A stretch of 64,000 nt of DNA from Botryllus schlosseri (Eukaryota), in assembly GCA_051294905.1 (NCBI GenBank), contig CM119384.1, positions 15,810,001 to 15,874,000 on the forward strand. The letters are read 5' to 3'. Positions 9,723 through 59,412 of the stretch are shown here, piece by piece. The stretch's first letter is position 1; every line of letters begins with the position of its first letter. The position numbers were made by a program, and so were the translations under genes. The notes below the pieces were generated by a model that worked only from the letters and a program-made list of their open reading frames with translations, did not search any database and was not told the DNA's origin.

Positions 9723-9770
9723 ATGAGTGACGGTAGCCCGAGGAACTCCATTGGGGAAATGGATATTGAG
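9723..9770 (+). CDS. Probable first coding exon (cytoplasmic tail [16 protein letters not shown])
   Basis: ATG at 9723, 16 open codons, strong GAG|GTAAGT phase-0 donor matching the phase-0 acceptor at 10471. Inferred; too short for the ORF track. Confidence 0.6.
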
Positions 9771-57700: not shown

Positions 57701-59412
57701 GCAAGTGAGTTGAAGTTTATGTCGTTACTTCTATTATCAATAATGCTTACTTGAGTACCATCTCTGTCTGTCATATGTGATTCTAAATGCCACCAAAATC
57801 TACTAGGCTACCTTGGTTTGGTGGGGTCTTACACAATACTTGTACTGGAAAGTTGAAGCACTTGTGAATGTACAAATTCCTTTGCGCTAGGTTTCCGAGC
57901 GATAGAAATGCATGGGACGCAGACGGACAATTCCTTCTTGGAAGCGGCTTTCTGATTACGCCCGTTTTGGAAGAGGGCGCCACTACTGTGACGGGTTACT
58001 TCCCTGGGGCATCTCGGTGGTATGACTACAGAACGGTGAGCGGTTGACTCTTGTTACCAATGCGAGTTCAGTATGTTGCAATGTCACGGCGAACAATTCA
58101 GGACTTGTTTTGACTTTGAATGATCCTACAATTTGTACACAGGGTGCAGAGGTACTACCATCCGGCAGGTTCATACAACTGGACTCGCCTTTGGAATACA
58201 TCAATCTGCACGTCAGAGGTGGCACGATCATTCCGAAACAGGTAACACTTTATTAATCACAAATGGTACTGCGATGACACGCGCCACCTTTAGCATCGTT
58301 ATTGCCTGAAAAATTCCGTAATTTTGTGTATAATCACAAAAAGGATTTTCCGCATTATGCGACTTGAAAATGTGATGCAGCGCGTTTTGAGAGGAATGTA
58401 ATGGCAGCGGGGATCAATAGCATTGAATTTCAGATTTCTATCTGTGTTATTACCCTGTGGTGGAAGTATATTTTATTGTAATTTAGCAATACTCATAATC
58501 ACACAGCACGACAGTAACTGCAGCCGGTTTCGCACAAGTCTAATTACAATCCTGCTGCACTATTCCAGCACCACGCCGTGACAACTACGCTGGCGCGTCA
58601 GAATCCAATGTCTCTGTTGGTCGCACTGGACGAGTCTGGCGAAGCGCACGGCACACTGTATTGGGACGATGGAGAGGAGAGGAACGTTTTGGATAATTAT
58701 CTGATGTTGGAATTCAGTTGCAGTGGGGTGAGTGATAGACCATTTTCCATTTTTCGATACCCCACCCTTGTTTTTTGGTTTAAAATACTTTCCGGCATGT
58801 TTCATGCTGAATGCATACTTTTTATGTTTGGAATTGTGGCCGAGTAAAAAGTACTTTTTTGGTGAATTTCCATGATCATTGTTAATGACTACGTCATGAT
58901 AGAATACTGTAAAGGCCTAGTGTAGTGTGATGGAACAATATATAGTGCATAGTGAATAGTGCGTGTATTTCTTCTAAGTTCATCGGTATTCATGGTCTAT
59001 ATTATAATCTGGCTCTTTTTGGACAAACTATGCCGTATATTTCAAATAAGACATCTCGAGAACTCTTTTAGCTAGCTCGAAGCATGGCCACTGAGCAGTG
59101 AACACTGTACGTTCTATTCGCATGCCGGTTAGACCGGATAGCTTTACCACAAAATTTGTGGCGCGCAGGAATAAGTTTTCATCTTGTCATTTTCAGTCTG
59201 CTGTGGATATCACCGTTTCTCATCCTATCAACGGCATGCTGGACGTCTCTTTGGTATTTGAAGGCGTGGTGATATACGGCGTGACGGGGGATGTTTCAAG
59301 CGTAAACGTAGACAGCTTGCCTGTTACCAGCTTCCGTGTTTCGGAAAACGTTCTCACAGTCGATAACTTATCGATGTCGATCGACGATAATCACAATTTA
59401 TCATGGTCTTGA
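9723..59412 (+). CDS. MGAM/SI-like: Four-module membrane-anchored GH31 alpha-glucosidase (sucrase-isomaltase / maltase-glucoamylase family), 76 coding exons, about 3,659 aa
   Basis: Manual GT-AG exon chain with consistent phase at every junction. Exon lengths sum to 10,980 nt, ending at TGA 59410-59412. Four copies of the GH31 nucleophile motif WI|DMNE (Asp codons at 21458, 35575, 44855, 54722), four HWLGDN acid/base motifs, and four each of GADVCGF, RNHN and trefoil-like DCxP..C..GC. Family is clear, but one-to-one orthology to SI or MGAM is not established. Confidence 0.9.
10471..10612 (+). CDS. Signal-anchor exon (type II transmembrane helix)
   Basis: TTGTAG|GAA...GTC G|GTAAG. Translates [47 protein letters not shown]. 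The phase-1 end joins the phase-1 acceptor at 14492. The same topology is established for SI/MGAM. Confidence 0.85.
10899..13396 (+). mobile_element. hAT DNA transposon, internally deleted, with frameshifted transposase remnant (in GH31 intron 2)
   Basis: 14-bp perfect TIRs CAGTGGCGGCTCGT / ACGAGCCGCCACTG and a perfect 8-bp TSD ATATTTTT on both sides. Confidence 0.9.
12439..13268 (+). pseudogene. hAT transposase fragment (TTF-type zinc finger + DUF4371-like region)
   Basis: Three overlapping ORFs in different frames containing [25 protein letters not shown] and [11 protein letters not shown] (first catalytic Asp motif). The rest of the catalytic and dimerisation domains is absent. Confidence 0.8.
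14128..14316 (-). mobile_element. Terminal fragment of MITE family B, reverse orientation
   Basis: Reverse complement aligns with 4127-4310; ends in CCCAACACTG. Confidence 0.75.
14492..14804 (+). CDS. Ser/Thr/Pro-rich (mucin-like) stalk plus start of trefoil domain 1
   Basis: Within ORF 14482-14844: [16 protein letters not shown]...[11 protein letters not shown], then ERFDCYPD...MCLERG. Donor GG|GTATGT. Confidence 0.85.
14740..27626 (+). CDS. GH31 module 1 (Ct-type)
   Basis: Exons 15375-15591, 16933-17072, 17349-17517, 18883-18979, 19116-19351, 19430-19548, 19858-20047, 20106-20219, 21458-21542, 21611-21755, 21992-22116, 22193-22373, 23845-23964, 24872-25012, 25664-25795, 25857-25995, 27152-27307, 27573-27706 (junction exon). 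Motifs [60 protein letters not shown]. Confidence 0.9.
18140..18400 (-). mobile_element. L2/CR1-superfamily LINE 3' coding fragment
   Basis: ORF 18142-18378: [39 protein letters not shown] matches the conserved end of CR1/L2-group ORF2. Confidence 0.75.
22558..23005. mobile_element. Intact hAT MITE family A
   Basis: TIRs CAGGGTTGTAA / TTACAACCCTG and perfect TSD CAACACGC. Confidence 0.92.
23090..23245 (+). repeat. Dispersed SINE/LINE 3'-tail family ending in short tandem repeats
   Basis: Shared TTGTGGTGTTTTGA...AATAAA(CTGAR)n core. Related copies at about 15840-15960 (reverse), 17920-18000 (reverse), 21045-21125 and 42660-42720. Confidence 0.55.
27627..38945 (+). CDS. Trefoil + GH31 module 2 (Ct-type)
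   Basis: Exons 28097-28325, 28575-28735, 29081-29249, 29341-29437, 30175-30410, 31220-31338, 32740-32929, 33693-33806, 35575-35662, 35726-35870, 35932-36056, 36110-36290, 36444-36563, 37149-37289, 37419-37550, 37608-37746, 38168-38323, 38892-39025 (junction exon). Same intron positions and phases as module 1. Confidence 0.9.
31392..32124. mobile_element. hAT MITE
   Basis: Imperfect TIRs CAGGTGTGGGCAAAC / GTCTGCCCACCCCTA and perfect TSD CTCTAGTA. Confidence 0.85.
31896..31958. mobile_element. 63-bp micro-MITE (same TIR family as element C) nested in the 31392-32124 element
   Basis: CAGTGGTTCTCAACC ... GTTTAAGAACCACTG, TSD ACATAGAC / GCCTAGAC (6/8 match). Confidence 0.7.
34344..35278. mobile_element. 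hAT MITE
   Basis: 16-bp perfect TIRs CAGTGGTCGGGAACCT / AGGTTCCCGACCACTG and perfect TSD ATATATGC. Confidence 0.92.
38946..49194 (+). CDS. Trefoil + GH31 module 3 (Ct-type)
   Basis: Exons 39951-40161, 40221-40384, 41185-41353, 41463-41559, 41746-41981, 42776-42894, 43330-43519, 44242-44355, 44855-44942, 45002-45146, 45207-45331, 45385-45565, 46080-46199, 46707-46847, 46911-47036, 48002-48140, 48204-48359, 49138-49246 (junction exon). Confidence 0.9.
40496..41048. mobile_element. hAT-like MITE, AGTA/TACT-rich family
   Basis: TIRs (T/C)AGAGATGG / CCATCTCTG, TSD TTTGTATG / TCTGTATC. Related AGTAGAAGTA/ACTTGAGTA-rich fragments near 17671, 43070, 44040, 48500, 51535, 51985, 55730 and 57560-57775. 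Confidence 0.7.
49195..59412 (+). CDS. Trefoil + GH31 module 4 (Nt-type), C-terminal
   Basis: Exons 49498-49618, 49679-49787, 50435-50592, 51333-51446, 51786-51943, 52205-52324, 52381-52508, 52871-52977, 54028-54145, 54536-54655, 54722-54818, 55505-55638, 56176-56337, 56513-56629, 57214-57362, 57891-58035, 58143-58241, 58569-58727, 59197-59412. Motifs [52 protein letters not shown]. Confidence 0.88.
53123..53989. mobile_element. Probable hAT MITE with AATTTTGAC subterminal repeats
   Basis: Termini GGGGTGATTTTTTT / AAAAAAATCGCCCCTG. Left end damaged and TSD weak. Confidence 0.55.
54978..55113. repeat. Palindromic (fold-back) MITE
   Basis: About 61-bp inverted arms with 3 mismatches around a loop of about 14 nt. 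Diverged relatives at about 33080-33420 and 47245-47410. Confidence 0.85.

What the first reader, a model, noticed from the sequence alone, without database searches (positions are those of the whole stretch)
9723..59412. Single polypeptide of about 3,660 aa with four apparently active GH31 catalytic units
Seen: junction exons 27573-27706, 38892-39025 and 49138-49246 each run from the last beta-strand of one module (..VSW / ..IKW) directly into the next trefoil with no stop, new anchor or signal peptide. All four modules retain both catalytic Asp motifs, and the only stop is at 59412. Established: canonical SI/MGAM have two units, with some longer mammalian MGAM forms having an extra Ct copy. 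A four-unit tethered 'multi-glucosidase' could digest several dietary glucans from one anchor.
Basis: partly seen in the sequence, partly recalled or inferred. Interest (0 to 1): 0.8.

Follow-up and report, generated by a model that had tools for sequence, protein, structure and literature searches.

The report
Four-unit gut alpha-glucosidase gene, sea squirt
This sea-squirt-type genome holds one intact 76-exon gene for a membrane-anchored starch-sugar-splitting enzyme with four working-looking catalytic units in a row, but the same four-unit gene is already annotated in another sea squirt and three- to six-unit versions are annotated in many animals, so it is a sound but ordinary find.

Summary
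I rebuilt the gene with a spliced aligner of my own. It has 76 exons (9723-59412, + strand), and all 75 introns are GT-AG. The CDS is 10,980 nt (3,659 aa), with the only stop at 59410-59412.

The protein has a short cytoplasmic tail, one hydrophobic anchor (aa 36-60) and a Ser/Thr/Pro-rich stalk, followed by four trefoil+GH31 units. Each unit keeps WIDMNE and HWLGDN. Each also keeps 58-59 of the 59 columns that are invariant in 50 reference units. Substitution patterns show purifying selection.

It is not new in kind. Styela clava has an annotated 3,618-aa "maltase-glucoamylase-like" protein that is colinear with this one: 67.6% identity, 76 exons, and 74 of 75 introns in the same place. Predicted proteins with four to six intact units exist in mouse, rat, echidna, wallaby, lizards, turtles, abalone and a tardigrade.

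One side result may be more interesting. Units 1-3 carry the 21-residue insert that marks vertebrate C-terminal (Ct) units. Unit 4 groups with vertebrate N-terminal (Nt) units. The unit order is therefore reversed relative to vertebrates.

No transcript data could be checked. The scan had also noted the unit 2/3 gene-conversion tract before, on this same window.

The parts
9723..59412 (+). Whole coding region of the four-unit GH31 gene (76 exons, 3,659 aa)
   Evidence: Spliced model; exon list in the full report; colinear with Styela clava P0259
9723..9770 (+). Exon 1: start codon and cytoplasmic tail (ends ..EMDIE)
   Evidence: it aligns to the Styela N-terminus ..NMEIEEP
10471..10612 (+). 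Exon 2, holding the single hydrophobic type II anchor (aa 36-60 = 10528-10602)
   Evidence: Kyte-Doolittle 19-residue window score of 2.76, the only segment above 1.5 in the protein
14492..14804 (+). Exon 3: Ser/Thr/Pro-rich stalk (46% S+T+P) and the first half of trefoil 1
   Evidence: Pfam Trefoil partial hit, E 0.0014
15375..27307 (+). Unit 1 (rest of trefoil 1, N-domain, GH31 barrel, C-domains), 17 exons; Ct-type insert at 19991-20114
21458..21460 (+). Unit 1 nucleophile Asp codon (D596 of WIDMNE), first codon of an exon
22074..22076 (+). Unit 1 acid/base Asp codon (D700 of HWLGDN)
27573..27706 (+). Junction exon 1 (exon 21): end of unit 1, linker, first half of trefoil 2
28097..38323 (+). 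Unit 2 remainder, 17 exons; nucleophile D1487 at 35575-35577, acid/base D1592 at 36014-36016; Ct-type insert at 32873-33701 (split by an intron)
38892..39025 (+). Junction exon 2 (exon 39): end of unit 2, linker, first half of trefoil 3
39951..48359 (+). Unit 3 remainder, 17 exons; nucleophile D2374 at 44855-44857, acid/base D2479 at 45289-45291; Ct-type insert at 43463-44250 (split by an intron)
49138..49246 (+). Junction exon 3 (exon 57): end of unit 3, linker, start of trefoil 4 (VDCMPSK)
49498..59412 (+). Unit 4 remainder (Nt-type, no insert), 19 exons; nucleophile D3235 at 54722-54724, acid/base D3340 at 56260-56262; stop at 59410-59412
59498..59503 (+). AATAAA polyadenylation-type hexamer 86 nt after the stop
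   Evidence: consensus match only

Best explanation
This is one protein-coding gene of an ascidian-type genome. It is the ortholog of the Styela clava gene annotated 'maltase-glucoamylase-like'. It encodes a 3,659-aa type II membrane protein of the sucrase-isomaltase/maltase-glucoamylase kind: a short cytoplasmic tail, one uncleaved signal-anchor, a Ser/Thr/Pro-rich (probably O-glycosylated) stalk, then four complete units. Each unit has a trefoil, an N-terminal beta-sandwich, a GH31 (beta/alpha)8 barrel and two C-terminal beta domains. Each unit should be a retaining alpha-glucosidase that uses the Asp of WIDMNE as nucleophile and the Asp of HWLGDN as acid/base; this is established GH31 chemistry, inferred here from conserved residues. 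Units 1-3 carry the 21-residue subdomain-b1 insert, with its Trp, that in vertebrate Ct units builds the +2 subsite and favours longer maltooligosaccharides. Unit 4 lacks the insert, like vertebrate Nt units. The likely job is exo-hydrolysis of alpha-glucan fragments at the gut epithelial surface, with long-chain-preferring units 1-3 followed, at the far C-terminal end, by a short-chain unit. The array grew by tandem duplication of an 18-exon block bounded by phase-0 introns, and gene conversion keeps it partly homogenised. Shown: gene structure, intactness, conservation, unit types. Inferred: expression as one polypeptide, activity, substrate preferences, tissue.
For: The gene model has no stop and all introns are GT-AG. 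I built it before I saw the Styela protein. It then matched that species' annotated gene in exon number (76 vs 76), and 74 of 75 intron positions and phases agree, at 67.6% aa identity over 3,582 columns. Pfam PF01055 hits exons of every unit, with E from 1e-23 to 6e-10 for the longer pieces. There are four copies each of WIDMNE, HWLGDN, GADVCGF and RWMQxGAFYP. Of 59 columns invariant in 50 reference GH31 units, the window units keep 58, 59, 59 and 58. As a control, the mole MGAM2 units, a protein reported to have lost catalytic residues, keep 52 and 55 (PMC6451114). Purifying selection: dN/dS is 0.14 for units 2 vs 3, and pN is 0.19-0.22 against pS 0.83-0.91 for the other pairs. There is a single anchor-grade hydrophobic segment, and the stalk is 46% S+T+P. 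The insert aligns with vertebrate Ct units. The insert exon matches the Ct unit of pig MGAM 9kz6 (E 2e-25) and CtMGAM 3TON (2e-18), but Nt structures only at E 2e-4 and without the insert. The role of the insert Trp at subsite +2 comes from PMC12805851.
Against: I could consult no RNA or protein data for this species, so the single 11-kb mRNA is a conceptual translation. The Styela model is itself a computational prediction whose transcript support I could not see. All three unit boundaries lie at phase-0 introns, so skipping of whole units would stay in frame. Mouse MGAM, which also has several Ct units, is reported to give Ct splice forms (PMC7658089). Substrate preferences are extrapolated from mammalian enzymes about 44% identical.
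Confidence: 0.8

Rival explanations
1. The gene is real, but the main products are shorter isoforms. Whole 18-exon units are skipped or chosen alternatively, so most protein molecules carry two or three units, as reported for the Ct splice forms of mouse MGAM.
For: The introns before exons 21, 39 and 57 are all phase 0, and units 2 and 3 are 2,676 and 2,655 nt, both multiples of three, so any unit skip stays in frame. Mouse ctMGAM splice forms N2 and N20 are mentioned in PMC7658089. NCBI lists 2,7xx-aa and 3,6xx-aa isoforms for the same mouse gene.
Against: All three front units are under purifying selection and keep every catalytic marker. That fits use of each unit but does not discriminate between the readings. 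The Styela annotation that was retrieved is the full four-unit form. No transcript data were available either way.
Confidence: 0.25
2. A single precursor is made and then cut by gut proteases into separate subunits that stay associated, as in vertebrate sucrase-isomaltase. The working enzyme would then not be one polypeptide.
For: This is established for mammalian SI (background knowledge). The linkers between units are short and exposed, and two of them contain Arg-Arg (..TEFRRVDC..TSFRRVDC).
Against: There is no direct evidence. Pig serum MGAM was purified and imaged with both units in one chain (PMC12805851). The third linker has no basic pair.
Confidence: 0.3
3. The four units are separate genes or separate mRNAs (internal promoters or spliced-leader trans-splicing in a tunicate operon), and the read-through frame is accidental.
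For: Tunicates do use trans-splicing and operons (background knowledge; earlier scan note on a spliced leader).
Against: The junction exons fuse the last beta-strands of one unit to the next trefoil in one exon and one frame. Units 2-4 have no start codon with a signal peptide or anchor. The same junction exons are conserved in position and phase in Styela at 65-68% identity. Downstream units made alone would lack any secretion signal.
Confidence: 0.03
4. One or more units are decaying or non-catalytic copies (as proposed for placental MGAM2), or are duplicates created by the assembly.
For: Tandem repeats are prone to both.
Against: The 76 exons contain no stop or frameshift. Each unit keeps 58-59 of 59 invariant columns, against 52-55 in the MGAM2 control. 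dN/dS is far below 1. The units differ by 19-59% in protein sequence and their introns are unalignable, so they are not assembly copies. The window has no N runs.
Confidence: 0.04

Closest known systems
Styela clava 'maltase-glucoamylase-like' (P0259, 3,618 aa; locus OZ123518.1, fetched as L001)
   Same: Colinear from residue 5 to the end. Four units in the same order (three insert-bearing, then one without), the same anchor and stalk, 76 exons, and 74 of 75 introns at the same column and phase.
   Different: Only 65-68% identical, so it is a different species. The stalk exon is shorter (160 vs 313 nt). Styela's units 1 and 2 are 92% identical (dS 0.16), whereas the window's front units are 68-81% identical. 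Styela has a second three-unit GH31 gene head-to-head upstream, which the 9.7 kb upstream in this window lacks.
Ciona intestinalis 'sucrase-isomaltase' (P0291, 2,734 aa) and the Clavelina lepadiformis homolog (P0292, 2,731 aa)
   Same: Same anchor, and the same logic of insert-bearing front units followed by an Nt-type last unit. The last units form one clade with window unit 4 (100/100).
   Different: These have three units, not four. Their unit 2 is a separate, older branch with a shortened insert, and it has no counterpart among the window's units.
Murid rodent MGAM long form (mouse NP_001355804.1, 3,616 aa; rat P0001, 3,615 aa)
   Same: Four trefoil+GH31 units on one type II anchor, all with WIDMNE and HWLGDN. 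It aligns end to end with the window protein at 44% identity.
   Different: The unit order is Nt, Ct, Ct, Ct, while the window has Ct-type, Ct-type, Ct-type, Nt-type. The extra units arose independently, since units cluster within each lineage.
Two-unit mammalian MGAM and SI (structures 9kz6, 3TON/3TOP, 2QLY/2QMJ, 3LPO)
   Same: Same domain make-up per unit, same catalytic motifs, and the Ct-specific 21-residue insert with its Trp.
   Different: Two units rather than four, and the order of unit types is the opposite.

Membership tests
GH31 alpha-glucosidase, SI/MGAM type | GH31 (beta/alpha)8 catalytic domain (Pfam PF01055) in each unit | tested here: met
   Exon translations from units 1-4 hit PF01055: E 3e-23, 1.4e-23, 1.3e-23 and 3.3e-17 for the exons near the acid/base Asp, and 6e-10 to 1e-4 for the barrel-start exons. 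Only exon pieces could be scanned.
GH31 alpha-glucosidase, SI/MGAM type | Catalytic nucleophile Asp in WIDMNE and acid/base Asp in HWLGDN | tested here: met
   Both motifs are present once per unit, four of each. 58-59 of the 59 columns invariant across 50 reference units are retained.
GH31 alpha-glucosidase, SI/MGAM type | P-type trefoil domain at the start of each unit | tested here: inconclusive
   An intron splits each trefoil, so the Pfam hits on half-domains fall below the cut-off (18.9 and 16.2 bits vs 21). The spliced sequence shows the Cys pattern and aligns with the trefoils of Styela and rat. A full-length Pfam scan was not possible.
GH31 alpha-glucosidase, SI/MGAM type | N-terminal type II signal-anchor followed by a Ser/Thr-rich stalk | tested here: met
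   One hydrophobic segment, aa 36-60 (KD19 2.76). Residues 62-146 are 46% S+T+P.
GH31 alpha-glucosidase, SI/MGAM type | Measured alpha-glucosidase activity | not testable with these tools
   Needs expression and assay.
Ct-type unit (as in CtMGAM/CtSI) | 21-residue insert in subdomain b1 with the +2-subsite Trp | tested here: met
   Present in units 1-3 (VWPDYPN.TVD..Q.W..QTENYRA), aligned with rat, echidna, lizard, turtle and frog Ct units. Absent from unit 4. The best PDB matches are the Ct unit of 9kz6 and 3TON.
Ct-type unit (as in CtMGAM/CtSI) | Phylogenetic grouping with vertebrate Ct units | tested here: inconclusive
   Tunicate front units, vertebrate Ct units and the Nt-type clade form an unresolved three-way split. 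A front+Ct clade is not rejected (AU p 0.39) but is not shown either.
Nt-type unit (as in NtMGAM/NtSI) | No insert, and grouping with vertebrate Nt units | tested here: met
   Unit 4 and the last units of Styela, Ciona and Clavelina lie in a clade with echinoderm units and vertebrate Nt units (UFBoot 96, SH-aLRT 94). A clade of all tunicate units is rejected (AU p 4e-44).
Single four-unit polypeptide | One mRNA that joins all 76 exons | not testable with these tools
   No transcript data. The only support is indirect: conserved junction exons and the annotated Styela model.

The most novel reading that the evidence does not exclude
In tunicates the two ancient GH31 unit types sit in the opposite order to vertebrates. 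The insert-bearing Ct-type units lie next to the membrane anchor and the insert-less Nt-type unit lies at the far C-terminus, whereas vertebrates have anchor-Nt-Ct(n). If so, the mixed Nt/Ct tandem enzyme was either assembled independently in tunicates and vertebrates from two pre-existing paralogs, or rearranged in one lineage. The textbook picture, in which the Nt-Ct duplication happened in a vertebrate ancestor, would then be wrong in detail. I found no description of this in the searchable literature. That library lacks most subscription journals, so the order may already be known.
Probability: 0.5. Interest if true: 0.45.

Novelty: new member of a known kind. Interest (0 to 1): 0.3.

Why it matters
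As a gene find, it adds a second tunicate example of a four-unit brush-border-type alpha-glucosidase, with a clean exon model for an apparently unannotated locus. It also shows that multi-unit GH31 arrays keep every unit under selection. The broader point concerns how the family evolved. Such arrays have grown repeatedly in rodents, marsupials, monotremes, reptiles, molluscs, a tardigrade and tunicates, by duplication of an exon block bounded by phase-0 introns. In tunicates the order of the two unit types is reversed relative to vertebrates. That bears on how the SI/MGAM family, a drug target in diabetes, was assembled. It also offers natural constructs for asking whether unit number and order affect starch digestion.

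Tried and rejected
1. **Rat guide alone.** Guiding the whole gene model with rat MGAM gave spurious micro-exons at unit ends and at the 3' end. I replaced these parts by re-aligning each unit with its paralog or with echinoderm units, and by reading the sequence directly.
2. My first exon was off by one base. This was corrected.
3. **The window's own protein in the collection.** It was not found among candidates of about 2,000 aa or more in either search. Shorter fragments were not searched.
4. **Spliced protein in external tools.** I used exon pieces and a local HMM instead.
5. **Trefoil hits.** Pfam hits on trefoil exon halves fall below the cut-off because an intron splits the domain.
6. 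**Poly(A) hexamers in the three inter-unit introns.** They occur about once per 540 nt, against once per 667 nt in all introns. This is uninformative.
7. **Literature searches.** Searches for tunicate SI/MGAM or ascidian GH31 found nothing relevant. The search for mouse ctMGAM-N2/N20 found only a review sentence.
8. **Timing of the triplication.** Synonymous divergence cannot date it relative to the split from Styela, because dS is saturated for most pairs.
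Full report
**What is there**

The window is AT-rich (about 40% G+C) and has no N runs. Earlier notes of this scan describe the genome as sea-squirt-like. My best protein relatives agree with that (see below).

On the + strand, open frames with GH31 sequence recur four times between about 14.5 and 59.4 kb. No similar sequence lies on the - strand.

**Gene model**

I wrote a protein-guided spliced aligner. It works at codon level, allows introns in all three phases, requires GT/GC-AG, and heavily penalises stops. 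I guided it first with rat MGAM, then unit by unit with paralogous or echinoderm units. I read the 5' exons by eye.

The result:
- 76 exons, a CDS of 10,980 nt, 3,659 aa
- ATG at 9723, and the only stop at 59410-59412
- GT-AG at all 75 introns, which range from 53 to 3,879 nt (median 390)

Exons: 9723-9770; 10471-10612; 14492-14804; 15375-15591; 16933-17072; 17349-17517; 18883-18979; 19116-19351; 19430-19548; 19858-20047; 20106-20219; 21458-21542; 21611-21755; 21992-22116; 22193-22373; 23845-23964; 24872-25012; 25664-25795; 25857-25995; 27152-27307; 27573-27706; 28097-28325; 28575-28735; 29081-29249; 29341-29437; 30175-30410; 31220-31338; 32740-32929; 33693-33806; 35575-35662; 35726-35870; 35932-36056; 36110-36290; 36444-36563; 37149-37289; 37419-37550; 37608-37746; 38168-38323; 38892-39025; 39951-40161; 40221-40384; 41185-41353; 41463-41559; 41746-41981; 42776-42894; 43330-43519; 44242-44355; 44855-44942; 45002-45146; 45207-45331; 45385-45565; 46080-46199; 46707-46847; 46911-47036; 48002-48140; 48204-48359; 49138-49246; 49498-49618; 49679-49787; 50435-50592; 51333-51446; 51786-51943; 52205-52324; 52381-52508; 52871-52977; 54028-54145; 54536-54655; 54722-54818; 55505-55638; 56176-56337; 56513-56629; 57214-57362; 57891-58035; 58143-58241; 58569-58727; 59197-59412.

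**Independent check of the model**

A whole-library phmmer search with one exon returned proteins that matched it four, three or two times. A word-indexed search then found a 3,618-aa protein of Styela clava named "maltase-glucoamylase-like". It aligns with my model from residue 5 to the last residue (65.5% by BLASTP; 67.6% over 3,582 MAFFT columns).

I fetched its locus. My aligner reproduces the annotated protein exactly from that DNA, with 76 exons. Of the 75 introns, 74 lie at the same alignment column and phase as in the window. The remaining one is shifted by one column.

I finished the window model before I saw this protein, so the agreement is real corroboration of every exon, the junction exons included.

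**Anatomy of the protein**

- Residues 1-35 form a polar tail.
- Residues 36-60 are the only strongly hydrophobic stretch (KD19 2.76; the next best in the protein is 1.5).
- Residues 62-146 are 46% Ser+Thr+Pro.
- The protein has 35 N-glycosylation sequons.
- Four units of 880, 892, 886 and 855 aa follow. Each begins with a trefoil Cys pattern that an intron splits.
- Exons of every unit hit Pfam PF01055.
- The linkers between units are 6-8 residues long and lie inside single exons.
- An AATAAA lies 86 nt after the stop.

**Are all four units likely active?**

Each unit has WIDMNE and HWLGDN, and also GADVCGF and RWMQxGAFYP.

I aligned 56 units from vertebrates, tunicates, echinoderms, amphioxus, molluscs, arthropods and others. 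With the four window units and the two mole MGAM2 units set aside, the other 50 served as references. Fifty-nine columns are invariant in those 50 units. The window units keep 58, 59, 59 and 58 of them. The two units of mole MGAM2, a protein reported to have lost catalytic residues (PMC6451114), keep 52 and 55, so the test can detect decay.

Substitution patterns show constraint. dN/dS is 0.14 between units 2 and 3 (dS about 1.0). For unit 1 against units 2 and 3, and for each window unit against its Styela counterpart, pN is 0.19-0.22 against pS 0.83-0.91.

**Unit types**

- Units 1-3 are 68-81% identical to one another and only 41-43% identical to unit 4.
- Units 1-3 have identical intron positions. 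Unit 4 shares 8 of its 19 with them, including the intron that separates WI from DMNE, so the nucleophile codon opens an exon in all four units.
- Units 1-3 carry a roughly 21-residue insert after VWP, with a conserved Trp. It aligns residue for residue with the insert of vertebrate Ct units and is also present in a single-unit amphioxus protein.
- Unit 4 lacks the insert. So do the last units of Styela, Ciona and Clavelina, vertebrate Nt units, and the echinoderm and protostome units.
- Searched against PDB sequences, the insert exon matches the Ct unit of full-length pig MGAM (9kz6, E 2e-25) and CtMGAM (3TON, 2e-18) over its whole length. Nt structures match only the part before the insert, at E 2e-4.
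- In mammalian Ct units the insert Trp contacts the sugar at subsite +2, and Ct units prefer longer maltooligosaccharides (PMC12805851).

**Phylogeny**

I built a maximum-likelihood tree of 47 units (LG+G4, 851 columns).
- Window unit 4 and the other tunicate last units fall in a clade with echinoderm units and vertebrate Nt units (UFBoot 96 / SH-aLRT 94).
- Tunicate front units form their own clade (100/99), and so do vertebrate Ct units (100/100).
- The order among these three groups is unresolved.
- Forcing all tunicate units into one clade costs 155 log-likelihood units (AU p 4e-44).
- Joining tunicate front units with vertebrate Ct units costs 2 units (p 0.39).

I named these groups after seeing a quick tree, which weakens the p-values as formal tests.

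Taken with the shared insert, the simplest reading is that tunicates have anchor-Ct-type(n)-Nt-type where vertebrates have anchor-Nt-Ct(n).

**How the array grew**

The window's units 1-3 group together (97/92), and so do Styela's (100/100). Ciona and Clavelina have three units, and their unit 2 is an older branch.

Either the two four-unit species duplicated a front unit independently, or a shared triplication has been homogenised.

Gene conversion is visible. Between units 2 and 3, exons 12-13 are 98% identical and the two short introns beside them are 91-92% identical (about 35871-36290 vs 45147-45565). Neighbouring introns are at random-level identity, and the last exons are 48-66% identical.

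All unit boundaries are phase-0 introns, and the unit 2 and 3 blocks are multiples of three. That fits unequal crossing-over within introns. It also means that skipping a unit in splicing would stay in frame.

**How new is it?**

It is not new in kind. Predicted proteins with every catalytic motif intact are already annotated:

| Units | Species |
|---|---|
| 4 | mouse (NP_001355804, 3,616 aa), rat, Antechinus, Pogona, Styela clava, the tardigrade Ramazzottius |
| 5 | echidna, pika, deer mouse, a turtle, a lizard, the abalone Haliotis asinina |
| 6 | kangaroo rat, wallaby |

Three-unit forms are common in frogs, lizards, bivalves, gastropods, echinoderms and an annelid. Some of the longest models may be annotation fusions; I did not check them.

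One paper states that two-site GH31 enzymes arose in vertebrates (PMC6451114). The database evidence above shows that multi-unit forms are much more widespread than that.

**What remains open**

No transcript or protein evidence for this species was available. The three rivals that matter are unit skipping by splicing, proteolytic cleavage as in SI, and separate mRNAs. The last is very unlikely, because units 2-4 have no start codon with a targeting signal and the junction exons are conserved. Substrate preferences are extrapolation from mammalian enzymes.

Noticed in passing
window 35871-36290 vs 45147-45565: Gene-conversion tract between units 2 and 3. Exons 12-13 are 98% identical and the two flanking short introns 91-92% identical, while neighbouring introns are at 45-57% identity. 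A second, older-looking patch covers exons 4-5 (94-95%, with the intron between them at 69%).
   Followed up: yes
window units 1-3 (14740-49225) vs unit 4 (49226-59412): The order of unit types is reversed relative to vertebrates. The insert-bearing Ct-type units come first, next to the anchor, and the insert-less Nt-type unit comes last. Styela, Ciona and Clavelina show the same order.
   Followed up: yes
window 21458, 35575, 44855, 54722: In all four units a phase-0 intron falls between the WI and the DMNE of the nucleophile motif, so the catalytic Asp codon is the first codon of an exon. It is one of only 8 intron positions shared by units 1-3 and unit 4.
   Followed up: partly
window 12738-13265 (+), inside intron 2: Stop-free stretch of 176 codons matching Pfam DUF4371 (E 1.2e-10), a domain I recall from hAT-type transposase-derived proteins. 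It is probably a transposon remnant, in the longest intron of the gene (3,879 nt).
   Followed up: partly
L001 1-4055 (-), Styela clava: In Styela a second multi-unit GH31 gene (2,809-aa product) lies head-to-head upstream of the four-unit gene. The 9.7 kb upstream in this window shows no GH31 similarity on either strand.
   Followed up: partly
window 3279-4070 (-): 263-codon ORF with a weak, sub-threshold Pfam LINES_N hit (E 0.0024). It may be an exon of a neighbouring gene on the other strand.
   Followed up: no
window 27308-27572, 38324-38891, 48360-49137: If the inter-unit introns were retained, the frame would stop after 10, 5 and 19 codons. Each of these introns has one AATAAA/ATTAAA hexamer, which is about the background rate for introns of this gene.
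   Followed up: partly
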